64,000 bases of DNA, taken from IMG/VR virus record IMGVR_UViG_3300034073_003340, positions 186,001 through 250,000 of that record; one strand, given 5' to 3'. Positions within the stretch are counted from its first letter, which is position 1. The number at the start of each line of letters is the position of its first letter. The notes under the pieces are model-generated. The model was not told the DNA's origin and did no database searches. It saw nothing but the letters and a program-made list of their open reading frames with translations. Shown here piece after piece: positions 29,248 to 63,827 of this stretch. Made by a program: the position numbers and the translations under genes.

Positions 29248-29280
29248 GGGTCGTCAACCAGTTTCCTAGTTGACGACCCA
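29248..29280 (-). promoter_or_regulatory. Inverted repeat covering the -35 of a cassette promoter
   Basis: tgggtcgtcaac...gttgacgaccca. Confidence 0.75.
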
Positions 29281-29293
29281 GCAAACTGCCTTT

Positions 29294-29617
29294 TTAGCTG
29301 TTGCTAACGCGCACCGCTGCCACACCCTCCAGCGAGGGCGACAGCGCCAGCCAGCCGCGCTTTGCGTCCACCAGGCCGACCTTCTGACCAGCGACCAGGT
29401 TCAGACCGTCGAAACCGCGCAGGCTGAACTTGACCGACGAAACATCCTTGCGCGTCAGCTTGAGCAGCTTTTCGCCCTTGGGGAGAGCCTTGCCGCAGAC
29501 CCGATCGGTGGGCTTGATCATCAGCACGCCGTCTTCCATCTTGACGCGAACCTTGGGAGCGTCCTTGACGAAAACCTGGGTGGCGGCTGCGTTGAAGTTC
29601 AGGGTAAAACGTGCCAT
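29294..29617 (-). CDS. AbrB/MraZ-like paralog 1 (putative DNA-binding)
   Basis: KVRVK...IKPTDR...LPKGEKLL...KRGWLAL, shared with 39719 and 56865. Confidence 0.75.
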   Translation of the reverse strand: MARFTLNFNAAATQVFVKDAPKVRVKMEDGVLMIKPTDRVCGKALPKGEKLLKLTRKDVSSVKFSLRGFDGLNLVAGQKVGLVDAKRGWLALSPSLEGVAAVRVSNS

Positions 29618-29724
29618 GTTTCGATCTCCTCGTTTCCAGCAGCGCCGATCGCTGCGTCCATGTTCTCGTTCTATACTCTGGTGAGGAGAAGTCAACCAGT
29701 TTTTCACCAGTTTTCAAAATCTGG

Positions 29725-30000
29725 TTAAAGGGAGCGAGCTTCCTGGAATGTCATCTCATCCACTAGGATGATATCAGCGTCTGTTTCAATCCAGGCCCGA
29801 TCGCCGCACTGAAGCTGTGATCCGTTATATACCATTTTACTTGGCCCTTGGATCTCAACTTCTCGGGCATAACGGACTTTGCCATTTACCTTTATGGTGT
29901 AGACAGGTCTGTTGCCGCCATCTTTGGCGTTCATCGCAATATGCTGCCGGTTTACATGAATGATCTTAGGCACTTGGAATCGCCTTTGGACGACCGTCAT
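29725..30000 (-). CDS. Conserved-type phage hypothetical protein
   Basis: KIIHVNRQHI..N...PV.T.K...YAREVEIQGPS..VY...L.CG.RAWIET; start uncertain. Confidence 0.75.
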   Translation of the reverse strand: MTVVQRRFQVPKIIHVNRQHIAMNAKDGGNRPVYTIKVNGKVRYAREVEIQGPSKMVYNGSQLQCGDRAWIETDADIILVDEMTFQEARSL

Positions 30001-30373
30001 CGCCAATATGAACGAACACATACATGGCTTCGCAGACTTTGGTCTCAACCCCTGTACAGCCCGCGAGCGCATAGGTACACACCATGACGCTCATGCTAGT
30101 GGTACCCTCACGCTTGATATCAGCGTAAATGACCACTTCGTCACCAACCTTCACAGGTGCGAGGAACTTGAAGCCCTCCACCGCAACCGTTACAGTTCTG
30201 CCACCTGCTCGTCGCTTTGTAACTGCGCCTGCTGCCAAGTCCATTTGACTCATGAGCCAGCCGCCGAAAATATCACCATCTGGGTTGGTGTCGTTGGGCA
30301 TGGCAGTAAGGATGCGGACGGGCTTGCGGCCCTCATTGATTGATGCTGTCATATGACCATGTAGAGGTATCAT
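29966..30373 (-). CDS. yciA: Acyl-CoA thioesterase (hotdog fold, YciA-like)
   Basis: AMPNDTNPDGDIFGGWLMSQMDLAAG...VTVAV..FKFLAPVKVGD...GTTSM. Confidence 0.9.
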   Translation of the reverse strand: MIPLHGHMTASINEGRKPVRILTAMPNDTNPDGDIFGGWLMSQMDLAAGAVTKRRAGGRTVTVAVEGFKFLAPVKVGDEVVIYADIKREGTTSMSVMVCTYALAGCTGVETKVCEAMYVFVHIGDDGRPKAIPSA

Positions 30374-30398
30374 CTTTTCAAAGTCAATAAATAGTCAT

Positions 30399-30707
30399 AT
30401 GACAAAACCAACTGATCCTCGAACCATTCTCCGTGAATCCATCGACCGCATCGACGAGCTTATGGGTTTCAAACACCCCAAGGCTTTTGGTCAAAAAACC
30501 GAACCTAGTGATCAAGAGATTGAAAACAAGGGTCAGCAACGTCTCAAGGCAGTGGCAGATCGTGCCAATACGGAAAAGAAGTCCTATGGATTTCTCAGAT
30601 CTCTTAAGAGTAGAGTGTTTGGCAAAAAGACTCCAGAATACCAGCGCGAGCCACGTTCTCCCGAGGAACGACTAAAGGCTATAGCTGCCCGCGCCAAGCA
30701 GTCTTAA
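30399..30707 (+). CDS. Hypothetical basic protein, probably late
   Basis: One of only two plus-strand genes called in this region; TAAATA at 30388-30393. Confidence 0.7.
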   Translation: MTKPTDPRTILRESIDRIDELMGFKHPKAFGQKTEPSDQEIENKGQQRLKAVADRANTEKKSYGFLRSLKSRVFGKKTPEYQREPRSPEERLKAIAARAKQS

Positions 30708-31528
30708 TCAGAGTCACTGTCATCTTCCTGATCCACGTCTCGCTTTGTCTGAGTCTCTAGAATAATATTCGCAAAAACAACACTAGCTTCTTTTCCGCCA
30801 TGTTGGGGACCAACACCCTCACTTGGGACGATTTTCTTACGAAGTTCCCCTGCGGCAATGCTCAGAACGCTGAGACGACGCTTTGCCGCAAGAACGCTAT
30901 CAAAGTCTTTGCCTTCTTTAATGCGCTCCTGGCACAAAGTGGAATAGCCAGCCATCATTCCATCACTTGATCGAGTCAACCTAGCATCGGCCAAAAGCAA
31001 AGCGAGCTCTATCGAAGCCTCGCGGCTGACTAATGCTTCCTCCTTGATCTTGGCGATGGCGTTGACTAGTTTATTGAGATAGTTCACATCGTCCTGGCCT
31101 TTGAGATCGAGCATCTCATTGATTGAAGAGACCTTGATACTTTTCCCATTCAGGAAAACATAGGGAAACTCTGGTTCTAGTTCACCCAAGCGATCAAAGA
31201 TTTCTCCGTGAATCCAGAAGCGCGAATAGTTGTCGCCCATATTGCGGTTTGGAATTTGCTCTAGCATGTCGAGGCTGAAGTCATCGTTCTGTTCTAACAA
31301 CAGACCAGTCTGCTCATTGAAGATCGTGAGTATCTCAGGATCGTCCTCAACGCTAAGATAGCCATAGTCGTTGTAGGTGCCCTTGAGGAGGGTTGAGTGG
31401 GGCACAAACAGGTCGAATGGCCCGTGGCCATTCTCATAGGTCGGACCCCTGAGGACCATGACGTAGGCGGTTTCACCCTCTCTGATCTCCAGACCAGAGA
31501 ACCCGCACGATTCACTCCAACTGCCCAT
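30704..31528 (-). CDS. Hypothetical protein
   Basis: 274 aa, GAGG SD. Confidence 0.8.
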   Translation of the reverse strand: MGSWSESCGFSGLEIREGETAYVMVLRGPTYENGHGPFDLFVPHSTLLKGTYNDYGYLSVEDDPEILTIFNEQTGLLLEQNDDFSLDMLEQIPNRNMGDNYSRFWIHGEIFDRLGELEPEFPYVFLNGKSIKVSSINEMLDLKGQDDVNYLNKLVNAIAKIKEEALVSREASIELALLLADARLTRSSDGMMAGYSTLCQERIKEGKDFDSVLAAKRRLSVLSIAAGELRKKIVPSEGVGPQHGGKEASVVFANIILETQTKRDVDQEDDSDSD

Positions 31529-31605
31529 TTGATGCCTCTAGCTGATACGACTGATATCGTAAAGCAGCACCTTAGCACCAAGGTCTTGTGAAGCAAATAT
31601 TCTTG

Positions 31606-31758
31606 TTAAAAGTTGTTGGCTTTGAATTCTTTTACCCAGCCACGGTCCCACGCCTTGTAGTCGTCAGAGCCTTTGGGGAACGGATTATCTTCACGCTCCT
31701 TGCTGTTGTGGTAGTCGGTCCGTCCCAACTTGACACGAGGATTTGGAGCCTTACGCAT
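31606..31758 (-). CDS. RMF-like small protein (50 aa, not in ORF track)
   Basis: MRKAPNPRVKLGRTDYHNSKEREDNPFPKGSDDYKAWDRGWVKEFKANNF; GGTGG SD. Confidence 0.65.
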   Translation of the reverse strand: MRKAPNPRVKLGRTDYHNSKEREDNPFPKGSDDYKAWDRGWVKEFKANNF

Positions 31759-31933
31759 TATCCACCATTTACCAATGCCCTACTATAGATATCAAACGCC
31801 TGACCCAATATGATCATCCCTGAACCGGTCAGCATCATGATTACAGGCGCTCGTATTCCTCTTCGCCAAAAATAGTGGGCAAATGGAAACATCGCAAATG
31901 CCCACAGGAGAAATACGAGATTAAGCAGCGTTA

Positions 31934-32329
31934 TCAAGCAGTTGCTCCAGCAGCAAGACGACCCATATTCTTGATATTGTCGCCCAGCTTTGCCATCATC
32001 AGCTGATTTTTGAAGCTTTTCACGAAGTTGGGATAGACCGCTTCAATGGACGGATATTCACCGTCGCTGGTCTGGTTGACAGCGATCTGGCGATATCCCT
32101 TATCCCGAATTTTCTTCGAGGTCAAGGCCTGCAGGTCGTGAGCGCCCCACCGTCCGGGATTGTATTTGAAGGTCAGCTTCTTGCGCGTTTCTGCGCTTTC
32201 GGGCCGCCGACCCCAGAAATTGTAGAGCTTGCCTTCGACCTCGACCCAGCCCCAAATCTTGTCTGAGCCCTTTTTGCCAGCATCCGGGTCATTACACCAC
32301 AGAAATGCCTTGATAGTGAAATCAACCAT
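31934..32329 (-). CDS. WGR-like domain protein
   Basis: SDKIWG...FWGRR...KK..KGY pattern; AGGAGATCGAAT RBS. Confidence 0.6.
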   Translation of the reverse strand: MVDFTIKAFLWCNDPDAGKKGSDKIWGWVEVEGKLYNFWGRRPESAETRKKLTFKYNPGRWGAHDLQALTSKKIRDKGYRQIAVNQTSDGEYPSIEAVYPNFVKSFKNQLMMAKLGDNIKNMGRLAAGATA

Positions 32330-32380
32330 GATTCGATCTCCTCTTTTGATGCCACAATATAGCACAAAAGAGGAAACTGT

Positions 32381-32689
32381 CTAGCCCTTTTTGGAACCAA
32401 GTTGTTCCCGGGCCCTTTGGATAGCAGTGCGGAGGTCGAGGCCTTCCTCTTCCCTGAGCTTGCGAATAAGCGCAACCTCGCGGTTGATTGCCTCACGATC
32501 GATGGGACGAAAGGGGACATATTCCGCGCCGCGTTCTTCGGCCCAAAGCTTGGCCGAACGTTCGGCATCAGCGAGATTGTTGAAGCTGTCCCAAAAGGCT
32601 TCGCGATCCATGGATTCGCCCTGACCCCAAATCATAGTGGGGAGGAAGAGACCATAAGAGGTTTCCTGAACTTGGACAATCTTGCGCAT
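32381..32689 (-). CDS. Hypothetical early protein
   Basis: Follows cassette promoter 32744. Confidence 0.75.
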   Translation of the reverse strand: MRKIVQVQETSYGLFLPTMIWGQGESMDREAFWDSFNNLADAERSAKLWAEERGAEYVPFRPIDREAINREVALIRKLREEEGLDLRTAIQRAREQLGSKKG

Positions 32690-32753
32690 ATCAATCTCCA
32701 CGTCTGCTTCCGATAAACCAGATTTAGCAGAACTGGTGAATATGTCAACCAGA

Positions 32754-33032
32754 TTATCCCCACCGTAGTTTGAAATAGATAGCCTCTTTGGTAAATCGCT
32801 TTGGTATTGTGAGTATTGCTTGACGCGATTCCAAGAGATTTCTCAAAAATTCCTTCAAGTCAGCTAATGACCAAGAAGTCTCGGGAAGGTGTGAACACCA
32901 CTCGACCATGTCAAAGCAGTCAGTTTCCTCGAGATTTTCCCTACTCAGAAGCTCAAGCATTTCCTCTATATCCGGATCAGGGTCGTGCTCTGATAGTTTG
33001 AGTAGCCGACGAAGTTCTTCCAATACTAACAT
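32754..33032 (-). CDS. FKLxW-family small protein (isolated copy)
   Basis: Ends RFTKEAIYFKLRWG. Confidence 0.75.
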   Translation of the reverse strand: MLVLEELRRLLKLSEHDPDPDIEEMLELLSRENLEETDCFDMVEWCSHLPETSWSLADLKEFLRNLLESRQAILTIPKRFTKEAIYFKLRWG

Positions 33033-33035
33033 TGG

Positions 33036-33293
33036 TTATCGGTTCATCAAATAGTTTTGCCAGCTCTTTATCTCTTCTGGAGTCCAAACTCGGGTTCTCA
33101 ATGCCTTGAGTCTGCCAGCTTCAATGGCTTCAAGCAAGGGAACCAGTTCCTTCCATGTGGATTCGTCTCGACCTAACCAACTAGCCGCTGCTCGACATTG
33201 TTGTTCCAAAGAATGTGGTTCGATTCTTTCTATAATCTCATGAGCAGTAACTTGATCTCGTCGAAGATTAGCCTCTTCATTGTTGTCAGTCAT
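33036..33293 (-). CDS. Hypothetical protein
   Basis: 85 aa, ATGA-coupled. Confidence 0.7.
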   Translation of the reverse strand: MTDNNEEANLRRDQVTAHEIIERIEPHSLEQQCRAAASWLGRDESTWKELVPLLEAIEAGRLKALRTRVWTPEEIKSWQNYLMNR

Positions 33294-33814
33294 GCGCTGC
33301 GAGCCTTATGGTATTCCAGAGCCTTTTCAGGAGTGCTAAGGCCCTTGATATCGCCTTCACCCACATAAGCAAGATGCGATCTGCCATCTGGAAACCAAAA
33401 GTCAATACCATAGACCATTGGACTGTTTCCCATCAATCCCGCGCCGCCCGAGACATGCCTGATTGTTCCGTGACCAGTTTCTCCCATGCCAAGATTGAAT
33501 ACAACAAAATCTCCAGGCTCATAGATTGCCGGTTTGGCTTTACTGATTTTCTTAATCAGTTCGAGTAGTATCTCGTCAGAGATATAACCGATCTCAAGTG
33601 AGTAGCGGTCCAGATATTCCCTAGCCACTGCTAGTTGTTCATTTTTCACCAGATTTGTCCTTGAAGACGTCGCCGTAGAGAGGATGTTCCCACCATTCTC
33701 CTGGATGATACCACTGCTCGCGCCGCTTGGATTCATCCAAGAGCCGCTGAATACGAGGGCTACGTTGGATAACACCACAGTTGAAAATGCTGAAAAATCC
33801 CTGCCAGAACGCAT
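33290..33814 (-). CDS. Hypothetical protein
   Basis: 174 aa, operon packing. Confidence 0.7.
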   Translation of the reverse strand: MRSGRDFSAFSTVVLSNVALVFSGSWMNPSGASSGIIQENGGNILSTATSSRTNLVKNEQLAVAREYLDRYSLEIGYISDEILLELIKKISKAKPAIYEPGDFVVFNLGMGETGHGTIRHVSGGAGLMGNSPMVYGIDFWFPDGRSHLAYVGEGDIKGLSTPEKALEYHKARSA

Positions 33815-34087
33815 TCATAGCAAAGACTCAACTTCAATAGCGGCTAGCTTTTGTGAAACCTCTTCGGCTGTGACTTGATTTTCATAGTCAAGTCCCAGTT
33901 GCTTCAAGCCATACTGATGAAGACGAGAAACAGCATCATCTCTGGATGTTAGTTGACCAGTTCTCTCAACAATAAGAATACGCCAACGATTGAAGCCCAT
34001 ATTGGCTTTGGTCTTGTGGTAGCCGGGTGTCTCGCTGCTATGCCAGATATTCACGTTATTCGCTCCAATCGTCAGAGACTTAATCAA
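33815..34087 (-). CDS. Hypothetical protein
   Basis: 90 aa, operon packing. Confidence 0.65.
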   Translation of the reverse strand: MIKSLTIGANNVNIWHSSETPGYHKTKANMGFNRWRILIVERTGQLTSRDDAVSRLHQYGLKQLGLDYENQVTAEEVSQKLAAIEVESLL

Positions 34088-34319
34088 AGAAGCCGCGCTT
34101 GCCTTTTATATACTGATCAAAGGCATCAGTTTTGCCGAAGATCTTTTCCATCTTACTGGGCTCATCTAACTGATTTTTAAGAGCTTCCAGATCGCGCCTG
34201 TCCTGCTCTGCCTGTTCAAGCAGCCTGTGAACTTCTTTCAGCCACGATCGCTTAACCGTTATTTTGGTGTCAGGATCCCCAAAAGTCACCGACTTCAAAG
34301 TCTTCATATCAATTGCCAC
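34080..34319 (-). CDS. Hypothetical protein
   Basis: 79 aa, operon packing. Confidence 0.7.
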   Translation of the reverse strand: MAIDMKTLKSVTFGDPDTKITVKRSWLKEVHRLLEQAEQDRRDLEALKNQLDEPSKMEKIFGKTDAFDQYIKGKRGFFD

Positions 34320-34605
34320 GGAGCGTCTCCAACTCGTCCAACAGCGCAGGGAGGGCGTTAGCTGCCCCTACGAGCAGATTCATATAAGCTACAGCAAGTG
34401 GCAGCTTTGGACAATCGTTTCCACCCTCAGAGGGGCTCTCTATCCCATTATGAACAAGCATCTCTGCGATGCCACCCATATGACTTTCATCAACAATATA
34501 TCGACAATTACATGGGTGATCGGGATCACCCATATGTCCGCCATGCAGGCTAACAGTTCCCCCGACGTCATCAATCAACTTACGGAGGGCTTGAATATCA
34601 GTCAC
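34309..34605 (-). CDS. Hypothetical protein
   Basis: 98 aa; ends AANALPALLDELETLR. Confidence 0.7.
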   Translation of the reverse strand: MTDIQALRKLIDDVGGTVSLHGGHMGDPDHPCNCRYIVDESHMGGIAEMLVHNGIESPSEGGNDCPKLPLAVAYMNLLVGAANALPALLDELETLRGN

Positions 34606-34608
34606 CGC

Positions 34609-34797
34609 TTACCTTTCAATAATAAAGACATCATCGTCAGGTCTTTGAGACTGGATAACATCTTTCCAGTTTTCTGCCTGCCGGAGAGCAACATCTCTCC
34701 CAAATTCAGGGATAATTCTGAACGGGCGACTTTCAATCATCAGTCGTGATCCAGCGCCATTTTTGGGCATTCTCACAACATAGAAGCCAGGCTCCAT
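34609..34797 (-). CDS. Hypothetical protein
   Basis: Start moved to MEPGFY after GAGGA SD. Confidence 0.6.
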   Translation of the reverse strand: MEPGFYVVRMPKNGAGSRLMIESRPFRIIPEFGRDVALRQAENWKDVIQSQRPDDDVFIIER

Positions 34798-34804
34798 TGT
34801 CCTC

Positions 34805-35131
34805 TTAGTTGATCGAACGGTCACCATCAACACTTGCTCCATAGCGACGGGCCCACTTCTCGCATTTGCGGAGTAGGACCTCACATATTTCCTCGTTGGA
34901 AGTCTCTGGGCTGTGAACGAAGATGGCATCGAGGGCACAAGCGATGATGTCGATGCTTTCGCCCACAACTCCATCGGAGCCCTCTGGGGAGCCTTGTTCG
35001 CACTTGCCGACCTCCTCGTAGAGTTCGGCGAGTTCGCTTTCTGTATGGCGAGCCACATCTCTCAGGGTGCGACCGTTGCGGATCGCCCCTGAGAAATGCC
35101 TCACGATATCGATGGGATCATTTTTGTTCAT
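34805..35131 (-). CDS. MazG-like nucleotide pyrophosphohydrolase
   Basis: RTLRDVARHTESELAELYEEV...VVGESIDIIACALD...KCEKW (ExxE...ExxD pattern). Confidence 0.65.
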   Translation of the reverse strand: MNKNDPIDIVRHFSGAIRNGRTLRDVARHTESELAELYEEVGKCEQGSPEGSDGVVGESIDIIACALDAIFVHSPETSNEEICEVLLRKCEKWARRYGASVDGDRSIN

Positions 35132-35196
35132 GCTGTAAAGTAACATGAACAGGAAAAGAGTCAATGTCAAAAGCGACCGCTAAGGTCTTTGACCTT

Positions 35197-35484
35197 TTAG
35201 GAGGCGCGCGATGCGATCCGCTGAACCGTGCTGTGGCTGAGCCCCAGGATCTGACCAAGGGTGCGATAGTCTTTCGACATATTGCTGGCGACCGTCTGTT
35301 TGAGAATGGGCAGGCTACCACAAACCCCAAGCTTGGACTGTCGGGAAACCCCCTTCAGAGGGTGACCACCGTTGGCGCTCGTCAGTCGATTATATACGGT
35401 CTTCTGCGTGAGACCATGGCGCGCTGCCAGTTCCTTGATGGAAACACCGCTGCGATATTCTGCGAGGGCGATCTTGGCATTCAT
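35197..35484 (-). CDS. Tandem HTH DNA-binding protein
   Basis: SIKELAARHGLTQKTVYNRL and YRTLGQILGLSHSTVQRI. Confidence 0.75.
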   Translation of the reverse strand: MNAKIALAEYRSGVSIKELAARHGLTQKTVYNRLTSANGGHPLKGVSRQSKLGVCGSLPILKQTVASNMSKDYRTLGQILGLSHSTVQRIASRAS

Positions 35485-35554
35485 TTGCTAAACTCCTTGT
35501 TGTTGCCTGTAAATTGGTTTTAGCAATTACAGGTCACGAGTCAACACCAAAGAA

Positions 35555-35737
35555 TCATTTTCTGATGTAGACAGTAGTGTAGACGCATTTGGCATTGACA
35601 CCCTGGAGTTCACGGGCCACCACCATACAATCCTTTTTGCTGTTAAACATATGATTGCTCACCCCAGCCCCTGTGCCCCACACGGCGCCCACGCCAAATA
35701 CTCCTGGCATAACGAGTAGCCAAACCTTCAAAGCCAT
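35555..35737 (-). CDS. Small membrane/secreted protein
   Basis: Hydrophobic N-terminus, CxxVA...C motif. Confidence 0.55.
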   Translation of the reverse strand: MALKVWLLVMPGVFGVGAVWGTGAGVSNHMFNSKKDCMVVARELQGVNAKCVYTTVYIRK

Positions 35738-35741
35738 TTCG

Positions 35742-56649: not shown

Positions 56650-56650
56650 T

Positions 56651-56812: not shown

Positions 56813-56864
56813 TACTCGTCTCCCATTAGGGGAGGGGAGGAGACTAACCCCTCCCCCGCCACCA

Positions 56865-57296: not shown

Positions 57297-57322
57297 ATGG
57301 GGGAGGCGAACCTCCCCCATGA
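57297..57322. terminator. Hairpin terminator
   Basis: catgggggagg-cgaa-cctcccccatg. Confidence 0.7.
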
Positions 57323-57670
57323 TCAGATATATTCTCCAAAAATCTCACGATCGTTACGACGATCAGGGATCATCATCTTTGATAGAGCGTGGATATACCC
57401 AAACCTTGCTGCTTCACGCCAGGCATCCATGGGGTTGATATCCACATCAAAACGCTTTGCTACCGCGTTTTGATCCTCTTCGTCGTTGTCATCAAGACCA
57501 ATGCCATTATAGACAACGAACTCCTCGGGAGATTCTGGATTGGGGACCGCACTAACAGTGACCAGAACTTCGTCACCGCAGTGGATCTGTAGAAAATAAT
57601 CTTCATCAAACGTATGGGCTTCAACGGCATAAAACTGCCGTGCCCTTTCGTTCGCATCAATATCTGACAT
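57323..57670 (-). CDS. Acidic hypothetical protein
   Basis: AGGAG SD; variant promoter 57726. Confidence 0.75.
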   Translation of the reverse strand: MSDIDANERARQFYAVEAHTFDEDYFLQIHCGDEVLVTVSAVPNPESPEEFVVYNGIGLDDNDEEDQNAVAKRFDVDINPMDAWREAARFGYIHALSKMMIPDRRNDREIFGEYI

Positions 57671-57755
57671 CGGGGTCTCCTGGTTGTCGCTATGACACCA
57701 GCACTAAATGTCTGCTACCCTCAACGTCAATAAGTTTAGATGAAATCTTCTGCTG

Positions 57756-57974
57756 TTAGGCTGTAAACTTTTGAGCGATCATTTGCTCAATCGTTGAAAT
57801 TTTGGCCTCGAGTATATCCAGCATGGGTTGACCGTATTTTTCCATACGGTCAGGTGGATAGTTCTCAATCATTCGCAGATAATTGATGCGCTCGGTCTGT
57901 AGACCTTGAAGCAAGAGGCGGCTCATCTTTTCGTTGAGCCGCTCTCTTCCCTCCCATGCTTTATGGAGATTCAT
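57756..57974 (-). CDS. Hypothetical protein
   Basis: TAATG-coupled. Confidence 0.7.
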   Translation of the reverse strand: MNLHKAWEGRERLNEKMSRLLLQGLQTERINYLRMIENYPPDRMEKYGQPMLDILEAKISTIEQMIAQKFTA

Positions 57975-58324
57975 TAACGCAACTCAGGGTCCGCGTCACG
58001 AGCAGCGGCCTCGGCCCAGTCAATGTAATAGTCGAAGACGCGTTCGACCAGATGCGCCGCTGCTTCCGTCGGAGTCTGCTTGACTTCGCCAAAGCCCAGG
58101 ATCGACATCACGAATTCCTCGGTCAGCGTGATCTTCATCTGCTTCCATTCTTCAGCAGACTGACCAAAGGTCGGGAAGATCATCTGGGCGTTTTCGTTGG
58201 CGCCCTGTGCTGCCGTCATGACGAGATAGCTGGCGATCGACCCCAGGCCACGAAATTCGTTGCCCGAGCAAAGAGCAGAAATCACATAATCAGCAGCATA
58301 GATCTTGGTTTCTTCAAGCTTCAT
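57974..58324 (-). CDS. Hypothetical early protein
   Basis: Cassette promoter 58381. Confidence 0.75.
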   Translation of the reverse strand: MKLEETKIYAADYVISALCSGNEFRGLGSIASYLVMTAAQGANENAQMIFPTFGQSAEEWKQMKITLTEEFVMSILGFGEVKQTPTEAAAHLVERVFDYYIDWAEAAARDADPELR

Positions 58325-58399
58325 TTTCGATCTCCTTGTTTGTGTGCCTATGCTCTGGTGATAGCACCACACCAGAGTTTGTCAACCAGTTTTAGGAGA

Positions 58400-59422
58400 T
58401 TATTTGGTGGATGCGGTATAAAGATATACCTCATTTTTTCCGCTATCCGCTGATGCTGTATAATATGAATATTTTTCATTTTTGTATTTTTTGTTTTTGG
58501 CTTCTTTGTGAACGAGGGACTCCAATTCCTCGATTACCTCATTGAGAGATATAGCCTTTTGATGCTCTTTGGGTGGCAGCAAGCTATTGCCAACCACGTC
58601 ATTTTCTTTGATCTTTTCAAGATGATGCTGGACTGCGCTCTGGTAATTGAGAGGAGGACTCCACCAGTCCGGGGCAGGAGTAGGTTCAGCCAACATGCCA
58701 TGGGGGTTCAACCAAAAGGCTGACAAGCTGTCAGTAAGCCAGTAGAGATCGTTTTGCGCTCGCTGTTGTTCCTCGGTCCAGTTGCGCGCCACGACTGTTG
58801 GACCCTGCTCGATCAGCTGACGAGCAACTCGCTGCTCGCTTGTGGCAATCAGATTCAGGGTATTGTCGAGCAGCTTTTGGTCAGCGGCTAAGTTCTCGAG
58901 GAACAATTGCTCGCGATAAGCTTTGACTTCGGTATTGTTTTTCAGAAGCCAGCCGATCTTTTTACAAGTGGTAATCAAGCCATCCCGAGACAGATCAATG
59001 TCAAGATAGTAGGCAACATCCTTCTTTATCTCAACTGACGGCTTATTACAATGCCGCAAGGTGTCCCAGAGGGCAAGACCATCTTTGGAGAGATAGAACT
59101 CCCCACCTGGCTTCGACTGAAACACCAGACCTTTCTTTATGAGGTCTAAAACGATGTCAACAGACAATATATCCATTTTTCTGGTATCAATCCATTGCCT
59201 CGTAAAAGATCCCTCTTGAAAAGATACCTCTTTGACATTGAGTATAAGATTGATCTGATCCTCAGATATACCGCGCTTTGCGAGAACCTTTTTGGCTTTC
59301 GCAAGGGTCAATCCTCGAATCAAATCATGAAGACTGACATTACGGCTGGTCAGGTCACGCTTCACCGCATCAGCCATACCGAATACCATGCCGTTCTCCT
59401 GAATATGTTTAAGAATCTTCAT
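58400..59422 (-). CDS. Hypothetical protein
   Basis: About 340 aa; variant promoter 59451. Confidence 0.75.
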   Translation of the reverse strand: MKILKHIQENGMVFGMADAVKRDLTSRNVSLHDLIRGLTLAKAKKVLAKRGISEDQINLILNVKEVSFQEGSFTRQWIDTRKMDILSVDIVLDLIKKGLVFQSKPGGEFYLSKDGLALWDTLRHCNKPSVEIKKDVAYYLDIDLSRDGLITTCKKIGWLLKNNTEVKAYREQLFLENLAADQKLLDNTLNLIATSEQRVARQLIEQGPTVVARNWTEEQQRAQNDLYWLTDSLSAFWLNPHGMLAEPTPAPDWWSPPLNYQSAVQHHLEKIKENDVVGNSLLPPKEHQKAISLNEVIEELESLVHKEAKNKKYKNEKYSYYTASADSGKNEVYLYTASTK

Positions 59423-59451
59423 ATCCAGTCCTATACTACTCTGGTTTGTTG

Positions 59452-60114
59452 TCAATCAAAGAACACAAGTTCGAGACGAGGAACCAAGTCCTCATGACCA
59501 ATGGCTTTGATCAGCTGAATTACCTTGGCTTCAACCCCCTCATACTTTCTATGGAGAACACTTACAATACGTTCACCGATAACAGGTGCTTCAGTTAACC
59601 TAACGATTGAATCCTCAGGAAATTCGCAGACGCCTGCTCGACACAATGACCATGCCGCACTTAACAGGGCACAGGTGTGTTCCTCATGATCCTCATAGAC
59701 GTTCTTAAGCCCGATCTTCTTACCATTTGGGCTAAGATAACTCAATACTCGTTTGTTTTGGCGGCTGAATTGATCCCACACTAGGTCTTCTTGCGGGAGA
59801 CTGTGGATAATAGTCTCCGCGACCGGCGCCAGCTTGCCTTCAAATACCACATGATCGGGGGCCAGTCCCCGCCTCAAAATACAGCGAATGAATTCCGTGA
59901 CGTCCAGAGTATTATGCTCGATGTGGAGATCGTCGATCAATATCGCCGCTACCACTAGACTCTCGGGGTTGGATTCACGATCCAGATAGTTCTTCATGAC
60001 CGTGAGGCTGACATCCTGCTCGTCCCCAAACATGGAGTCAGCATAGATATGCGCGAACTCAACGAACATATGAGGCGTCGGAAGATCCGGCCTATCAGGA
60101 AGATGTGAACCCAT
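59452..60114 (-). CDS. Hypothetical protein, possible HUP/Rossmann nucleotidyltransferase-like
   Basis: VEFAHIY...ILIDD...CALLSAAW.L.R.G...SVL..KY. Confidence 0.5.
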   Translation of the reverse strand: MGSHLPDRPDLPTPHMFVEFAHIYADSMFGDEQDVSLTVMKNYLDRESNPESLVVAAILIDDLHIEHNTLDVTEFIRCILRRGLAPDHVVFEGKLAPVAETIIHSLPQEDLVWDQFSRQNKRVLSYLSPNGKKIGLKNVYEDHEEHTCALLSAAWSLCRAGVCEFPEDSIVRLTEAPVIGERIVSVLHRKYEGVEAKVIQLIKAIGHEDLVPRLELVFFD

Positions 60115-60144
60115 GTGCGTTTTCTAACACAAAACCAGAGTTCG

Positions 60145-60444
60145 TCAATTGATATTAGGTAATTTGACCTGATCCATTTCATCAACCCAGGTCAGTTTAA
60201 ACAGAACCGCATCTTGTTTTTCTTTGATCAAGAAAACCTGAAAATTTCCATTGCTCTGGCAAGATGTTGACCATTTTCCTTTGATCATTTCCATACACCA
60301 GTCCTCGACATCCGTTCGGGTAAAGTAATGTCTTACATATCTATCGGTCTTCGGGCATCGCTGTAAAACGCTCATTATCCCATTAAACCTGAATTGATAC
60401 CAGAAAAGCTGGTTGCTTTGTCTAGACACGGGAAGATTCGTCAT
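60145..60444 (-). CDS. FKLxW-family small protein
   Basis: DVEDWC..MIKGKW...FLIKEKQDAVLFKLTW. Confidence 0.8.
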   Translation of the reverse strand: MTNLPVSRQSNQLFWYQFRFNGIMSVLQRCPKTDRYVRHYFTRTDVEDWCMEMIKGKWSTSCQSNGNFQVFLIKEKQDAVLFKLTWVDEMDQVKLPNIN

Positions 60445-60695
60445 GTTTTAAAATGATCTCGCCAAGCTAGTTTGAAAAGCATAGCATCACTATCATCTTT
60501 GATGTAAAAGGTGATGCTATGATATTCAGCGACAAAAGTCCATTCGCCTGATATCATATCTATACACCAGCGCCCCGCTTTGGCATCTTCTGGACGTTTG
60601 ACGGAGAAAGTATGCCAGCCCAGATGATTGGCCGGGTTTGTTTGACTGCCCATCAGCAATTGGCCAATGGCCCCAATCGGGTTAGGCTGACTCAT
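60441..60695 (-). CDS. FKLxW-family small protein
   Basis: RWC.DMISGEW...FYIKDDSDAMLFKLAW. Confidence 0.85.
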   Translation of the reverse strand: MSQPNPIGAIGQLLMGSQTNPANHLGWHTFSVKRPEDAKAGRWCIDMISGEWTFVAEYHSITFYIKDDSDAMLFKLAWRDHFKT

Positions 60696-61096
60696 AGGGT
60701 CCCATATTCCCATGCCTCGATGGCGGGCAGCGGCGAACCCCGGCGAGCAAACTCGGCCTTGAGATCAGCTTCAGCCTTGCGAATGGCCTGCTCGGCCTCC
60801 CATTCATCAGCATCCTTGGCTTCCTTGACATCGTAGTAGTGGCTCCAGGAAGTATACTGAATACCATCCTTCTCCGAACGATAAGCAAGGGCAGCGTCCT
60901 CTTCTGCCTGGTGACGCTCGAACTCCTGTTCATAGGTGTCGAAGAAGTGGAGCATCATCTCCACTGAGTGACCGCGGGGGCGAATGCCGTGGATGCCCTT
61001 ATAGAGGTCGCTGTAGGATTCCTGGAAGGCCGGAGTCGCCATGTCGGCGAGGGTGAGGGTGCGAACGTTGCCGTTGTCGTTGAAAGTGAGACCCAT
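60692..61096 (-). CDS. Hypothetical early protein
   Basis: YSDLYK..HGIRPRG motif; promoter 61152. Confidence 0.75.
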   Translation of the reverse strand: MGLTFNDNGNVRTLTLADMATPAFQESYSDLYKGIHGIRPRGHSVEMMLHFFDTYEQEFERHQAEEDAALAYRSEKDGIQYTSWSHYYDVKEAKDADEWEAEQAIRKAEADLKAEFARRGSPLPAIEAWEYGTL

Positions 61097-61182
61097 CTGC
61101 GTAACTCCTCGTTGCTGCCTATGTCCTGGTTCTAGCAAAAATAGGTGAAGAGTCAACCACAATCTAACCAGAGTTGTGAATT

Positions 61183-62922
61183 TTATCCACTTGCTGATTC
61201 CAGTAGTCGATCAACGTGCCATTGGCAAAAATCTTCCATAGTGCAGGTTTTGCTGAATCCTAGAGTGAGCGCAAAATCCCGAAAATCATAATCACAGTCC
61301 CATATGGTTATGTTGAGACCCTTGAAGAATCTTACGTTTGCCTGCCATACAATCCTACTAAATTCCATTTCCACATCAGCGGGAATCTTTGCCCTCGCCC
61401 TCAGATTAACATAAGGCAACGCATAGGGAACGCGAGCACCGGTATTGTAACTGGTGACTACACTGAGCCCGCCAAACAGTGATCCCACGATAAAATCACG
61501 TAGATCAACCACATCATAATACTCAGTTCCAGCATAGTTGGAAAAATCCGACAAGATTACCGTGTCGATGACCTTGACATCTTTTGGTAGAATCGCGATA
61601 GCACTGGCAATGGTTCCACCAGTCACACAGTCATCTTCTACCATTACATATTCACCAGCAGGAATGCTACTGGCCTGGTCTTTTAAGCTTGGCATTCCGC
61701 CGCGATTTGACCTGTAGAGAGGCTTATCCTGAGTATCGCTCAACGCAAAATATCGCGTTGAGTCAATTCGGTAAGATCCTTCAAAGAACGGATCAAGACT
61801 GATAGTGGGTCGATCTCCTACTACCTCTTCAGCCTTTTTGATTTGGTCTGTTACCGAAACAAAGTGAACCTTATTTTTCTGGCCAGTTTTTTTAAACAAC
61901 TGAGCAATGCCAAGTCTGATAGCACTTTGAAGTTGAATGCGACGCTTTTCCAACTCTTCAAGCGAAGGGAAATGAGATGTAAAAACACTGCCAAGATCCT
62001 TCCAAAGATCAATGGCTAGATTTTCTTCATTGCGAATCAAGTAAGGAAGATCACCTGTATCCAACTTGTCCCAAGACTTTAGATATTCACTTACCCTAGG
62101 ATCCAAATGGTCATGATTACCCTCGCGAGCCAACTTGCTGGAAATATTACTGCGCGGCACACAAATGTGGTTAGAGGGCAGCGCCTTAGCGAACCCCTGG
62201 TTGTCTGAGCCAAAAACGTATACGACTTTGATTCCATCCGATATGTGTTTTTGGATCGATTCAGTCAGCCTTGCTACCACATCAGTAAAATTGATTTCAG
62301 CTGGCATATAGCGTGAGGCCCAAGGATCACAGGATAACCAGCTGCTATCCTGCGTGGCGAGTTCTACCATAGCACAACGGTGAACCGCAGGGATGGCCGC
62401 GGTTCCGTTATACTTTTGGCCCACATAACTATCATGACCTGGTGAGAAGAACCCTGCGATTACCTGTGATTTGCCATCCTGTTCTATGAGCTCACGGGCT
62501 GCTTCCATCATGGCAATATGACCGTTATGGATTGGTGCCATGCCACCAGTGGTCACTAGGACCACTCGTCTCTTTCCGCTACTGGTTTTGTAATTTTCGA
62601 TCAGCTTGTGGAAAGAAGTGGTCAAAAACATTGGATCATAGGCTTTATGATCCTTGGCTAACTTTTCCAGGCCGTCATCAAAAAAGCCAGCATCATAGAG
62701 AACTTGAGTGTTCTGATATTGGCTGTAGAGATAGTGATAACAAGGGTCACTTAGCGCCTTCCAAGCATATCGCTGGTCAGGGGTCATCGCTCCTTTTTCT
62801 TGAAGCGTATAACCATACTCAGCAGCTTCTGAGGGTAGAATGGCCGGATCGACCCCGAGAATCTCATATAGATTCTCAAGAGGTCGATACATTGTTATAC
62901 CACAGGCGTAAGTATCTGTCAT
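61183..62922 (-). CDS. NMNAT/NadD-like nucleotidyltransferase fused to type-I PRTase domain
   Basis: TGGMAPIHNGH, GFFSPGHDSYV..K, HRCAMVELA...W...DPW, VFGSDN; C-terminal VMVEDDCVTGGT PRPP-binding motif. Confidence 0.75.
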   Translation of the reverse strand: MTDTYACGITMYRPLENLYEILGVDPAILPSEAAEYGYTLQEKGAMTPDQRYAWKALSDPCYHYLYSQYQNTQVLYDAGFFDDGLEKLAKDHKAYDPMFLTTSFHKLIENYKTSSGKRRVVLVTTGGMAPIHNGHIAMMEAARELIEQDGKSQVIAGFFSPGHDSYVGQKYNGTAAIPAVHRCAMVELATQDSSWLSCDPWASRYMPAEINFTDVVARLTESIQKHISDGIKVVYVFGSDNQGFAKALPSNHICVPRSNISSKLAREGNHDHLDPRVSEYLKSWDKLDTGDLPYLIRNEENLAIDLWKDLGSVFTSHFPSLEELEKRRIQLQSAIRLGIAQLFKKTGQKNKVHFVSVTDQIKKAEEVVGDRPTISLDPFFEGSYRIDSTRYFALSDTQDKPLYRSNRGGMPSLKDQASSIPAGEYVMVEDDCVTGGTIASAIAILPKDVKVIDTVILSDFSNYAGTEYYDVVDLRDFIVGSLFGGLSVVTSYNTGARVPYALPYVNLRARAKIPADVEMEFSRIVWQANVRFFKGLNITIWDCDYDFRDFALTLGFSKTCTMEDFCQWHVDRLLESASG

Positions 62923-62961
62923 GTAGCCTATCTGCTACCAAACTGGTGACCTGTCAACCAC

Positions 62962-63360
62962 TCAGTAGCCAAAAAGACCAGCCCCACCCAGACAGTCGAT
63001 TTCTTCCTTGATCGGCTTTTGGCCCACGGCTTCAAGAACTTTGTTTTGGTTGTAGATGAGCATAGCTTTTTCGCTGAGTTCCTGGGCCTTGATATCCAGG
63101 TCGTGAGCTTCTTTAGCGGTCAGCTTTCGATCAGCCAAAGCCTTGGCGAGATCCATCTTCAAAGCGTTACAGTCGCCCCTTGAATAGCCACTGTCGATTA
63201 TTTCGCTGGCTTGGTCATATTCATAGCGGCCCACTTCCTGATCAGGGCGAACCAACCAGTCTGGCAACATATGCCAAACGCCAGCGACCCCAGCACCCAC
63301 ACAAATCAGCATAATCGAGATGCCAAAAATATCTCGACCACCCTGAGAAATTTTAGCCAT
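62962..63360 (-). CDS. Membrane-anchored hypothetical protein
   Basis: N-terminal TM segment. Confidence 0.7.
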   Translation of the reverse strand: MAKISQGGRDIFGISIMLICVGAGVAGVWHMLPDWLVRPDQEVGRYEYDQASEIIDSGYSRGDCNALKMDLAKALADRKLTAKEAHDLDIKAQELSEKAMLIYNQNKVLEAVGQKPIKEEIDCLGGAGLFGY

Positions 63361-63754
63361 TGATTATATCCCATTCACTTGCGATGTATGCGTAGTAGGA
63401 ATTTTCCTCGATACGCATGAAGTTGCTGGTCACGCTGGTCGAGCGTTCCACATAGGCGTTGCCCCGGATAGCCTGGCGCATGATGCTCTCACAGATGAAC
63501 TTGACCACTGCCTCTTCATCCTGAGGCTGGGCCGGGCTCAGCATAACCGCGTCGCGAGCAGATTCCCAAACGGAAATCGATACCAGGTAATGATTGGCGA
63601 CCTGTGCGCGGGCTGCGGTGCGCATTGCGCTCTCTGCCCACGAAAACGCATGAACGGCGTTGGTTTCCAGATCGTTCTTGAACTTCGCCAGTTCGACATC
63701 ATTGGCAGTAACCGCATTGGTGAAGAACCGCTTGATTTCTGCGAGGGTAATCAT
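63353..63754 (-). CDS. Hypothetical early protein
   Basis: Cassette promoter 63810. Confidence 0.75.
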   Translation of the reverse strand: MITLAEIKRFFTNAVTANDVELAKFKNDLETNAVHAFSWAESAMRTAARAQVANHYLVSISVWESARDAVMLSPAQPQDEEAVVKFICESIMRQAIRGNAYVERSTSVTSNFMRIEENSYYAYIASEWDIING

Positions 63755-63827
63755 TTCCGATCTCCTTTGTGACTTGCTATTCACCAGTTCTAACAGAAAC
63801 AGGGTAGATGTCAACCATATTCATGGA

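What the first reader, a model, noticed from the sequence alone, without database searches (positions are those of the whole stretch)
29248..63816. 35-kb early region built from at least 32 promoter-hairpin-RBS gene cassettes
Seen: almost every intergenic gap is the same 55-75 bp module on the minus strand: AACTGG-TTGAC(A/T)-N16-TA(G/T)AA(C/T)-leader-AGGAGATCGAA-ATG. Each drives one to a few unrelated ORFs. Some copies are near-identical: 40101-40144 equals 41044-41087 (44 nt), and 32705-32752 differs from 40110-40157 at 2 of 48 nt. Established, from memory: the Caulobacter housekeeping consensus is TTGACGS/GCTANAWC, and T4-type PeSL elements are mobile promoter stem-loop cassettes that shuffle early genes. 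Inference: an integron-like or PeSL-like gene capture and shuffling platform, in which any captured ORF is expressed immediately by host RNAP. No recombinase gene was seen in the window.
Basis: partly seen in the sequence, partly recalled or inferred. Interest (0 to 1): 0.9.

Follow-up and report, generated by a model that had tools for sequence, protein, structure and literature searches.

The report
Repeated promoter-hairpin cassettes in jumbo phage
A giant environmental phage carries a region of 50 kb or more in which about 40 nearly identical host-type promoter/ribosome-site modules, often folded around a hairpin, each switch on one or a few unrelated small genes. It resembles the 'PeSL' cassettes of T4-type phages but has a different anatomy and sits in a different phage lineage.

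Summary
A PWM finds 34-35 modules (aaaCTGG-TTGACw-N16-TGn-TAGAAC/TATCAC, then a leader, AGGAGATCGAA and ATG) between 29257 and 63814. All are on the minus strand; none lie on the plus strand or in 1-29000. About six degenerate copies also exist, and the array runs past the window to about 80 kb. The quoted near-identities are exact.

The window is part of a 436-kb IMG/VR phage contig, distantly related to Agrobacterium phage Atu_ph07 and Sinorhizobium phage Phosso. Phosso has a related module.

The -10 fits the alphaproteobacterial RpoD consensus GCTANAWC. About one third to one half of the modules place the -10 inside an inverted repeat whose arms covary.

Three related jumbo contigs share a colinear backbone but differ by cassette-sized gains, losses and replacements. 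At least six single genes have moved, each sitting directly behind a module. One module is a mosaic of two others.

However, synteny breaks are nearly as common at junctions without a module (19/27 against 21/23). No recombinase or attC-like site is present.

Verdict: a PeSL-like promoter/stem-loop cassette array, a new variant of a known kind. The promoter role is well supported, the role as a recombination substrate is plausible but unproven, and the integron-like reading is unsupported.

The parts
29196..29265 (-). module P29257 (-10 TAACTC), drives 28968-29198 and probably the downstream GluRS operon
   Evidence: PWM 36.1
29615..29703 (-). module P29695 (TAGAAC), ATG at 29617
32327..32391 (-). 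weak or partial module P32383 (TATATT), ATG at 32329
   Evidence: PWM 9.6
32687..32756 (-). module P32748 (TAAATC), ATG at 32689; near-identical to P40153
35482..35552 (-). module P35544 (TAAAAC)
37740..37802 (-). module P37794 (TAGAAC)
38192..38255 (-). module P38247 (TATCAC)
38601..38670 (-). module P38662 (TAAACC), arms CCTATTCAG/CTGAATATAGG
39680..39726 (-). degenerate module (TTGACA-N16-TAGTCT, arms CACCCTGG/CCAGGGTG) in front of a 290-nt non-coding stretch
40091..40161 (-). module P40153 (TAGAAC); mosaic of P32748 (-35 half) and P41096 (-10/leader half)
40525..40595 (-). module P40587 (TAAAAC) in front of the translocated gene 40168-40527
41034..41114 (-). module P41096 (TAGAAC) with a perfect 16-bp inverted repeat around the -35
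   Evidence: (I6)
41556..41626 (-). module P41618 (TATCAC), arms in everted order AACTGGTGA/TCACCAGTT
   Evidence: (I2)
42272..42329 (-). weak module P42321 (TAGGGT); its -35 overlaps the stop codon of 42318-42515; same subtype as P42577
42513..42585 (-). module P42577 (TAGAAC), 12-bp stem around the -10
43402..43468 (-). degenerate module (TTGACG-N15-TATAGG) inside a 10-bp GC-rich stem followed by a T-run
44149..44218 (-). module P44210 (TATCAC)
44934..45002 (-). module P44994 (TAGAAC), arms CACCTG/CAGGTG
45342..45402 (-). module P45394 (TATCAC)
46193..46259 (-). module P46251 (TAGAGC)
47108..47160 (-). degenerate module (TTGAAC ... TATCCG, arms GAACGAAA/TTTCGTTC)
47677..47744 (-). module P47736 (TATCAC)
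48825..48889 (-). module P48881 (TAAAGT)
49395..49461 (-). module P49453 (TAGAAC), highest PWM score
50382..50453 (-). module P50445 (TAGAAC) in front of the translocated gene 49947-50384
50889..50957 (-). module P50949 (TTGATT/TACAAA), perfect 15-bp stem
   Evidence: (I7)
51238..51308 (-). module P51300 (TAAAAC), 13-14-bp stem
   Evidence: (I5)
51645..51710 (-). module P51702 (TAGATT), no hairpin
52108..52176 (-). module P52168 (TAGAAC), perfect 13+3+13 palindrome centred on -13
   Evidence: (I15)
52508..52580 (-). module P52572 (TAGAAC)
53201..53268 (-). module P53260 (TATCAC)
54380..54441 (-). module P54433 (TATGAT) in front of the FtsK-like gene 53267-54382
54723..54784 (-). weak module P54776 (TATTGT)
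55099..55168 (-). module P55160 (TACAAC) in front of the translocated gene 54802-55101
57183..57272 (-). module P57264 (TAAACC), long leader
57668..57738 (-). degenerate module (TTGACG ... TTTAGT-GCTGGTG)
58322..58393 (-). module P58385 (TATCAC), everted arms CTCTGGTG/CACCAGAG
59420..59463 (-). weak module P59455 (TAGGAC), short leader
   Evidence: PWM 8.8
61094..61164 (-). module P61156 (TAGAAC), arms CCTAT/ATAGG
62943..62969 (-). degenerate module start (GTGG-TTGACA-GGTCACCAG) in front of 61183-62787
63752..63822 (-). module P63814 (TAGAAC) in front of the translocated gene 63353-63754
28968..63754 (-). about 80 small minus-strand genes, mostly ORFans, arranged in about 35-40 transcription units

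Best explanation
The region is the accessory, probably early-expressed and hyperplastic part of a 436-kb jumbo phage whose host is likely an alphaproteobacterium. It is built from about 40 copies in the window (about 50 in the contig) of one composite regulatory module.

Each module contains, in order: an A-tract plus CTGG, a -35 TTGACw, a 16-nt spacer, an extended -10 (TGn-TAGAAC or TATCAC), a conserved leader of about 25 nt, the RBS AGGAGATCGAA, and the ATG.

The proposed working is as follows.
- Each module is read by the host's primary-sigma RNA polymerase. This is inferred from the sequence, not shown.
- Each module switches on one to a few unrelated small genes.
- In many copies the spacer pairs with the sequence just after the -10, or with the sequence before the -35. 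The promoter core then sits inside a hairpin that can form only in read-through RNA from the upstream unit, or in extruded DNA. I infer that this hairpin insulates or processes upstream transcripts, as the PeSL stem-loop does.
- Because the copies of about 60 bp are direct repeats, they also serve as patches of homology for the phage's general recombination. This would produce gene conversion between modules and gain, loss, replacement and relocation of promoter-plus-gene cassettes. That is PeSL-like modular shuffling and needs no dedicated recombinase.

The recombination role is supported by comparative patterns but is not proven.
For: Promoter family:
- Copy number is far above chance, and all copies lie on the coding strand, 47-79 nt upstream of an ATG with an RBS.
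- TG at -15/-14 occurs in 32 of 39 copies. The -10 matches GCTANAWC with at most 1 mismatch in 21 of 39. That consensus is quoted in PMC8144410.
- The same module occurs in three related jumbo contigs and several smaller ones, always in the direction of transcription.
- A related form occurs in the cultured Sinorhizobium phage Phosso.
- The only GenBank phage relatives of the 734-aa peptidase are Atu_ph07 and Phosso.

Hairpin:
- A perfect helix of at least 7 bp around the -10 occurs in 36% of 129 modules. It occurs in 10.6 +/- 2.5% (maximum 18.6%) when the 3' halves are swapped among modules.
- There are 58 different arm sequences among the 64 helices.
- 8 of 20 folded modules have z <= -3.6.

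Plasticity and exchange:
- 78 proteins yield only a handful of Pfam families.
- The window and relative R share 33 reciprocal orthologues on a colinear backbone with many cassette-sized differences.
- By my reading, about 6 of 11 clean gain, loss or replacement events are bounded by modules on both sides.
- Six translocated genes (40168-40527, 49947-50384, 54802-55101, 63353-63754, 39719-40093, and one beyond the window) each sit directly behind a module in both genomes. Only 32 of 76 genes overall do so.
- The ORFan 42318-42515 is flanked by two modules of the same subtype, where R has a single module.
- P40153, P41096 and P32748 are 86-88% identical, against a family mean of 49%, although their flanks and genes are unrelated.
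- P40153 is a left/right mosaic of the other two.
- Only 3 of 16 orthologous genes keep the orthologous promoter subtype.
Against: - Synteny breaks are almost as frequent at junctions without a module: 19 of 27 against 21 of 23 (Fisher p = 0.085; reciprocal analysis p = 0.73). Several gains lie inside operons (48439-48827; R19191).
- The nearest relative that differs in structure shares only 45-80% amino-acid identity, so no junction can be read at base resolution.
- Strains at 99.8-100% identity show no structural difference.
- A third or more of the modules have no convincing hairpin.
- The hairpins lack U-tracts, and canonical terminators are not enriched (22 against 17.4 expected).
- G:T and A:C mismatches in the stems are equal (19 against 20), so an RNA-level role is not shown.
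- The promoter activity itself, its timing and the polymerase used are all untested.
Confidence: 0.6

Rival explanations
1. The modules are only a promoter family. They are strong early promoters kept alike by selection for an extended optimal sequence, with occasional gene conversion. The gene turnover of the region comes from ordinary illegitimate recombination in dispensable DNA, and the modules play no causal part.
For: Breaks are nearly as common at junctions without a module. Some gains lie inside operons. No structural variants were found among near-identical strains. The same consensus recurs in distantly related phages, which argues for functional constraint.
Against: - Blocks of 44-48 nt are identical or nearly so, including non-consensus spacer and leader positions, next to unrelated genes.
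- P40153 is a mosaic.
- Promoter subtypes are swapped at orthologous genes.
- All six translocated genes carry a module.
- An ORFan is flanked by two modules of the same subtype.
Confidence: 0.3
2. The array is an integron-like capture platform. A site-specific recombinase would recognise the folded inverted repeat, as IntI recognises attC, and insert or excise cassettes.
For: The array consists of repeated inverted-repeat elements with variable arm sequence and conserved structure, placed between unrelated ORFs.
Against: No integrase, resolvase or transposase family appears in any window ORF. Every cassette has its own promoter. The repeats lie 5' of the genes. No conserved R''/R' type core is visible in the consensus. 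Many modules lack the repeat. Many breaks lie away from modules.
Confidence: 0.03
3. The palindromes over the -10 are operators for a dimeric phage or host repressor that shuts the early promoters off (or an activator that turns them on), rather than nucleic-acid hairpins.
For: The commonest form is a near-perfect palindrome centred at -13 (ATTCACCAGTTCT-GCT-AGAACTGGTGAAT at 52133-52161). The CCAG/CTGG core recurs at three places in the module. G:T and A:C mismatches are symmetric. Two HTH proteins are encoded in the region.
Against: There are 58 different arm sequences among 64 helices. Inverted and everted arrangements both occur (CACCAG..CTGGTG and CTGGTG..CACCAG). Loop lengths vary from 3 to 16 nt, and the fixed-register consensus of the arms is weak. 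One protein could not read all of these.
Confidence: 0.1
4. The modules are read not by the host holoenzyme but by a phage-encoded sigma factor or polymerase, and so need not be early.
For: The final C of the -10 and the invariant CTGG before the -35 depart from the E. coli sigma-70 consensus. The generic sigma-70 scan misses most copies. Jumbo phages often encode their own transcription machinery.
Against: The -35 is an exact TTGAC, the extended -10 TG is present, and the -10 fits the published alphaproteobacterial RpoD consensus. Apart from weak region-4 (HTH) matches, no sigma-factor or RNA-polymerase family was seen in the window. The rest of the genome was not examined.
Confidence: 0.1

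Closest known systems
PeSL (promoter-early stem-loop) cassettes of T4-type phages (Arbiol et al. 2010, PMC2839356; Comeau et al. 2014, PMC4122927)
   Same: Both are composite intergenic modules of about 55-75 bp. Each has an A/T tract, a sigma-70-type -35/-10, a stem-loop, an SD and an ATG. Both are repeated many times as direct repeats in regions of ORFans that vary between relatives. In both, single- or few-gene cassettes each carry their own promoter, degraded half copies occur, and no dedicated recombinase is known.
   Different: Here the stem-loop encloses the -10 (or the -35) instead of lying upstream of the promoter. The arms are mostly CCAG/CTGG- or CCTAT/ATAGG-based rather than polyG/polyC. 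The -10 is of the alphaproteobacterial type (TAGAAC). The host phage is a 436-kb jumbo phage only distantly linked to T4. Terminator activity, mini-circles and crossover points have not been shown. Breaks are not significantly enriched at the modules.
T4 early promoters
   Same: Both are a large family of strong, unusually extended host-polymerase promoters (UP-like tract, -35, extended -10) in front of many small non-essential genes.
   Different: The consensus and host group are different. The conserved leader plus RBS and the embedded inverted repeat are not T4 features.
Integron attC cassette arrays
   Same: Both are arrays of unrelated ORFs separated by imperfect inverted repeats in which structure is better conserved than sequence.
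   Different: No IntI is present. The repeats lie 5' of the genes and contain a promoter. No attC core sites are seen, and the cassettes are not promoterless.
Hairpin promoters of phage N4 virion RNA polymerase, and single-strand promoters such as Frpo of plasmid F
   Same: In these too, promoter elements lie within a hairpin-forming sequence.
   Different: Those are recognised as extruded or single-stranded hairpins with specific short stems and loops, by a dedicated polymerase or on ssDNA. Here a standard duplex -35/-10 geometry is present and many copies lack the hairpin.

Membership tests
PeSL (T4-type promoter-early stem-loop cassette) | Sigma-70-like -35 and -10 at promoter spacing, on the coding strand, just upstream of a gene | tested here: met
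   TTGACw-N16-TAnnnC occurs in 34-35 copies, all on the minus strand, 47-79 nt from the ATG.
PeSL (T4-type promoter-early stem-loop cassette) | A/T-rich tract upstream of the -35 | tested here: met
   The consensus is aAAaCTGG-TTGAC in all four groups of phage contigs.
PeSL (T4-type promoter-early stem-loop cassette) | Stem-loop located just upstream of the promoter and acting as a terminator | tested here: not met
   The stems enclose the -10 (36% have a perfect helix of at least 7 bp) or the -35 (24%) rather than lying upstream. There is no U-tract, and terminator-like sites are not enriched. Terminator activity itself cannot be tested here.
PeSL (T4-type promoter-early stem-loop cassette) | Shine-Dalgarno sequence and start codon at the 3' end of the element | tested here: met
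   AGGAGATCGAA-ATG; 16 of 32 module-led genes carry GGAGATCG with at most 1 mismatch.
PeSL (T4-type promoter-early stem-loop cassette) | Concentrated in hyperplastic regions rich in ORFans | tested here: met
   There are no modules in 1-29000, which holds tail and baseplate genes. The region is mostly ORFans, and its gene content differs strongly between relatives.
PeSL (T4-type promoter-early stem-loop cassette) | Insertions, deletions and replacements between relatives have their junctions in the elements | tested here: inconclusive
   21 of 23 module junctions are breaks, but so are 19 of 27 junctions without a module (p = 0.085 and 0.73). About 6 of 11 clean events are module-bounded, and six translocated genes are each module-led. 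Divergence is too high to read junctions at base level.
PeSL (T4-type promoter-early stem-loop cassette) | Recombination between neighbouring elements yields mini-circles | not testable with these tools
   This needs outward PCR or long reads from infected cells. The only indirect signs are the mosaic module P40153 and the near-identical copies.
Integron | IntI-type tyrosine recombinase next to the array | tested here: not met
   No Phage_integrase, resolvase or transposase family hits any of the 132 window ORFs scanned. The rest of the 436-kb genome was not seen.
Integron | attC sites with conserved core sites at the 3' end of promoterless cassettes expressed from one Pc | tested here: not met
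   The repeats are 5' of the genes and each contains its own promoter. The consensus shows no attC-type cores.
Alphaproteobacterial RpoD (primary sigma) promoter, TTGaCgS / GCtANAWC | Match to both boxes at the published spacing | tested here: met
   21 of 39 window modules match GCTANAWC with at most 1 mismatch, and 10 match exactly. 38 of 39 match TTGACGS with at most 2 mismatches. The consensus is taken from PMC8144410. Activity was not tested.
Intrinsic (Rho-independent) terminator | GC-rich stem-loop followed by a U-tract | tested here: not met
   22 sites were found against 17.4 expected, and none lies at a standard module. The one exception is the degenerate module at 43424-43460.

The most novel reading that the evidence does not exclude
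The inverted repeats that wrap the promoter core are not just RNA insulators. They would be structure-specific recombination sites, either extruded cruciforms or folded single strands cut by a phage junction-resolving or other nuclease. The array would then be an active, hairpin-targeted system for capturing and relocating genes, in which every captured ORF lands behind a ready-made host promoter. This would be a recombinase-independent or novel-enzyme analogue of an integron in a jumbo phage.
Probability: 0.07. Interest if true: 0.85.

Novelty: new variant of a known kind. Interest (0 to 1): 0.5.

Why it matters
If the modules really act as both promoters and recombination linkers, PeSL-type modular shuffling is not a peculiarity of T4-type coliphages and vibriophages. 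It would be a general way in which very large phages build and reshuffle their accessory ('host takeover') gene sets.

The array also gives about 130 natural variants of one strong alphaproteobacterial promoter/leader/RBS unit, which is useful for promoter biology and for engineering in rhizobia and relatives.

It also poses a concrete mechanistic question: why is the -10 placed inside a covarying hairpin?

A cultured relative with a similar module exists (Sinorhizobium phage Phosso), so all of this can be tested at the bench.

Tried and rejected
- Megablast of 20 kb of the region against GenBank phages gave no match. A 76-nt module searched with blastn gave only chance hits.
- The single metagenome scan, anchored on a conserved cassette protein, returned only two contigs of about 1.5 kb. 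No closer relative with structural differences could be obtained.
- Exact-protein look-ups found the same phage in four other assemblies. They were 99.7-100% identical with unchanged gene order. Their contig ends fall at near-identical modules or at a 32-bp palindrome, which is an assembly effect and not biology.
- One look-up failed because my start codon differed from the called gene.
- Rfam gave no family in the window.
- The generic E. coli-type promoter scan misses the modules because it demands a T at the last -10 position.
- The strand-asymmetry test (G:T against A:C mismatches in stems) was uninformative: 19 against 20.
- My first up/down helix script used wrong indices and was replaced.
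- A single-protein operator and an integron were both considered and rejected as main explanations (see rivals).
- The resemblance of CTGGTG to the E. coli Chi core (from memory) was noted only as speculation. Its counts on the two strands are balanced.

Full report
ORIGIN AND SETTING

The window is 100% identical to IMGVR_UViG_3300034073_003340, a 435,856-bp viral contig. Window position equals contig position minus 186,000.

GenBank phages contain no DNA-level relative. The left 29 kb encodes tail and baseplate proteins (a T4_gp9_10_N domain, Ig-like and tail-fibre repeats), an M15 peptidase, a 734-aa S8 peptidase and a GluRS-like protein. The only phage homologues of the S8 peptidase are in the jumbo phages Agrobacterium phage Atu_ph07 and Sinorhizobium phage Phosso, at 31% identity. 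The phage is therefore an uncultured jumbo phage, distantly allied to jumbo phages of Rhizobiales.

THE OBSERVATION

The strict pattern TTGACW-N16-TAKAAY occurs 11 times, all on the minus strand between 29668 and 63814, against 0.07 expected. AGGAGATCGAA with at most 1 mismatch occurs 21 times against 1.6 expected.

A PWM built from the copies finds 34-35 modules on the minus strand from 29257 to 63814. It finds none on the plus strand and none in 1-29000. Inspection of the remaining gaps adds at least five degenerate copies.

The two identity claims are exact: 44 of 44 nt, and 2 mismatches in 48 nt.

The -35 lies a median of 59 nt from the ATG. Gaps that hold a module have a median of 66 nt. 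Sixteen of the 35 units contain one gene, and the mean is 2.2 genes per unit. Only two paralogous pairs exist among about 100 predicted proteins. Of 78 proteins, only a few have any Pfam family: FtsK-like, 4HBT, a cytidylyltransferase, M23, two HTH proteins and Phage_T4_Y00F.

The array continues beyond the window to about window-equivalent 80.3 kb.

ANATOMY OF THE MODULE

The consensus is the same in four groups of phage contigs: aAAaCTGG, then TTGAC, a 16-nt spacer ending in ttcTGc, TA.aAC.gGt..aTaGg.Ag, the RBS and the ATG.

TG at -15/-14 (an extended -10) is present in 32 of 39 window copies. The commonest -10 hexamers are TAGAAC (15 copies) and TATCAC (7 copies). Together with the preceding GC, 21 of 39 match the Caulobacter RpoD -10 consensus GCtANAWC with at most 1 mismatch (the consensus is quoted in PMC8144410).

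A generic E. coli-type scan misses most copies because they end in C. It also finds no excess of intrinsic terminators: 22 against 17.4 expected.

THE HAIRPIN

The spacer can pair with the sequence that starts at the end of the -10. Examples are the perfect 13+3+13 palindrome at 52133-52161, 12-14-bp stems at P42577 and P51300, and a 15-bp stem at P50949. Alternatively the spacer pairs with a segment upstream of the -35, as in the perfect 16-bp stem at 41078-41114.

I pooled 129 modules from the window contig and its relatives. A perfect helix of at least 7 bp around the -10 is present in 36%. When 3' halves are exchanged between modules the figure is 10.6 +/- 2.5% (maximum 18.6% in 200 trials). 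For the helix around the -35 the figures are 24% against 17 +/- 2.5%.

The 64 helices of at least 6 bp use 58 different arm sequences, in both inverted and everted order. Pairing is therefore kept, not one sequence.

Eight of 20 window modules fold with z <= -3.6, and four have a positive z-score, i.e. fold no better than shuffles.

Transcription from a module's own promoter would start inside the 3' arm. The hairpin can therefore exist only in read-through RNA from the upstream unit or in extruded DNA. G:T and A:C mismatches are equally frequent, so the data do not decide between RNA and DNA.

RELATIVES AND GENE ORDER

Pattern scans of IMG/VR recovered two further jumbo contigs with dense arrays in the same orientation: 3300034072_002211 (277 kb, 'R') and 3300049044_000033 (462 kb, 'T'). 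Several others carry a few copies each, for example 3300031088_000008 (417 kb).

The window and R share 33 reciprocal-best orthologues at 27-81% amino-acid identity. These lie on a colinear backbone interrupted by many cassette-sized differences.

By my reading, about 6 of 11 clean gain, loss or replacement events are bounded by modules on both sides. Two examples:
- 51715 | P, 51309, P, 50956, P | 50442 in the window, against one module in R.
- 45399 | three module-led cassettes | 42592 in the window, against one module in R.

Six genes occupy different positions in different phages: 40168-40527, 49947-50384, 54802-55101, 63353-63754, 39719-40093, and one beyond the window. The homologue of 40168-40527 lies between the 48894 and 47273 homologues in R, in T and in the 417-kb contig, so its place in the window is the derived one. 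All six sit directly behind a module in both genomes, whereas only 32 of 76 genes overall do.

The ORFan 42318-42515 is flanked by two modules of the same subtype (CACCAGAGT-TAG). R has a single module of that subtype directly in front of the orthologue of the next gene.

The systematic count tempers this picture. 21 of 23 informative module-bearing junctions are synteny breaks, but so are 19 of 27 junctions without a module (Fisher p = 0.085; p = 0.73 when R is the reference). At this divergence turnover is high everywhere, and enrichment at modules is not established.

Strains 99.8-100% identical from other samples show no structural change. No relative of intermediate distance was found.

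EXCHANGE BETWEEN MODULES

Modules average 49% identity in a fixed register. P40153, P41096 and P32748 are 86-88% identical over about 60 nt, with sharp loss of similarity in both flanks and unrelated downstream genes.

P40153 equals P32748 at six consecutive informative sites in the -35 half. It equals P41096 at the next five sites in the -10/leader half. This is the pattern expected from a crossover in the spacer.

Orthologous genes in the window and R usually carry different promoter subtypes. Only 3 of 16 pairs are reciprocal best matches.

WHAT IT IS NOT

None of the 132 window ORFs scanned hits an integrase, resolvase or transposase family. The repeats lie 5' of the genes, each contains a promoter, and none shows attC-type cores. 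The integron analogy therefore fails on its defining features.

A single repressor operator is unlikely given the diversity of arm sequences, orientations and loop lengths.

Rfam has nothing in the window.

A CULTURED COUNTERPART

In 120 kb of Sinorhizobium phage Phosso (PV764938, host S. meliloti), the window-trained PWM finds 15 sites, all on the transcribed strand. Their form is cGG-TTGACt-N16-TA...-cagaacATAGGAA-...-GGAGATCGAA-ATG, again with arms (TTCCTAT/ATAGGAA and longer) enclosing the -10.

This supports an alphaproteobacterial host and shows that the architecture is conserved while the arm sequences change.

COMPARISON WITH THE KNOWN

PeSLs of T4-type phages are composite elements: an A/T tract, a stem-loop terminator just upstream of a sigma-70 early promoter, an SD and an ATG. 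They are clustered in hyperplastic regions and associated with indels. They have been shown to recombine into mini-circles, with crossovers between the -10 and the ATG (PMC2839356, PMC4122927).

The present array shares the composite nature, the repetition, the ORFan context and the signs of exchange. It differs in three ways: in where the stem-loop sits (around the promoter core), in promoter type, and in phage lineage. Terminator function and circle formation remain untested.

I therefore file it as working like a PeSL array and as a new variant of that kind, not as a demonstrated member.

CONFIDENCE

- Promoter/leader family read by the host holoenzyme: about 0.85-0.9.
- Hairpin under selection: about 0.8.
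- Modules contribute as recombination substrates: about 0.5.
- Integron-like site-specific system: 0.03 or less.

Noticed in passing
window 39429-39718 (minus strand): A degenerate module is followed by 290 nt without an ORF. This stretch holds two 23-nt direct repeats (TTAATCATGAACTGGCCGTAGCG at 39625-39647 and 39544-39566) and a perfect 13-bp stem (39465-39492). It may be a small RNA or a regulatory leader in front of the M23-peptidase-like gene 38862-39428. Rfam has no match.
   Followed up: partly
window 51039-51070: A perfect 32-bp palindrome (CACTGGTAAGGACCAG/CTGGTCCTTACCAGTG) lies inside the coding sequence 50956-51240. Contigs of the same phage from three other assemblies end at or within it (51041 in two, 51068 in one).
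   Followed up: partly
window 27662-28930 (minus strand): This is a phage-encoded class I glutamyl/glutaminyl-tRNA synthetase-like gene (tRNA-synt_1c plus an anticodon-binding domain). It lies directly downstream of the last module and heads a tightly packed operon reaching to about 20952. No tRNA genes are in the window, whereas Phosso carries dozens.
   Followed up: partly
window 14954-17158 (minus strand): The only GenBank phage homologues of this 734-aa S8-family peptidase are in Agrobacterium phage Atu_ph07 and Sinorhizobium phage Phosso (31% identity). This is the best available clue to lineage and host group.
   Followed up: yes
window 53267-54382 (minus strand): An FtsK/SpoIIIE-like DNA translocase sits as a single-gene cassette with its own module. 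It has no counterpart at this position in the 277-kb relative.
   Followed up: partly
window 29000-64000 and Phosso (L177-L179): The RBS-plus-spacer motif AGGAGATCGAA is conserved as a unit, not just the SD. It also occurs before 5 of 44 genes that have no module, and it recurs in Phosso. It may be a translational optimum, or a second patch of microhomology for exchange: the 42318-42515 insertion looks as if it is joined at this motif.
   Followed up: partly
window 56829-56857 and 57287-57330 (minus strand): Two polyG/polyC-type stem-loops (GGGGGAGGGG...CCCCTCCCC, and GGGGGAGG/CCTCCCCC) lie in gaps without a standard module. They recall the G-run/C-run stems described for T4-type PeSLs.
   Followed up: no
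window 1-10000: This stretch has lower G+C (42-45% against about 50% in the array). It holds densely overlapping ORFs of 65-150 codons on both strands, with GGGG-type RBS and no modules. It may be a second accessory region with different regulation or origin.
   Followed up: no
modules throughout 29257-63814: The recurring arm CTGGTG/CACCAG appears at up to three places per module (before the -35, in the spacer, after the -10). From memory, it resembles the core of the E. coli Chi site GCTGGTGG. The counts on the two strands are balanced (28 against 31), so no Chi-like orientation bias is seen.
   Followed up: partly
window 38717-38804: This is the longest inverted repeat of the window (43-nt arms, 74% complementary, 2 nt apart). 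It lies in the gap between 38862-39428 and module P38662 and overlaps a doubtful 37-codon ORF.
   Followed up: no
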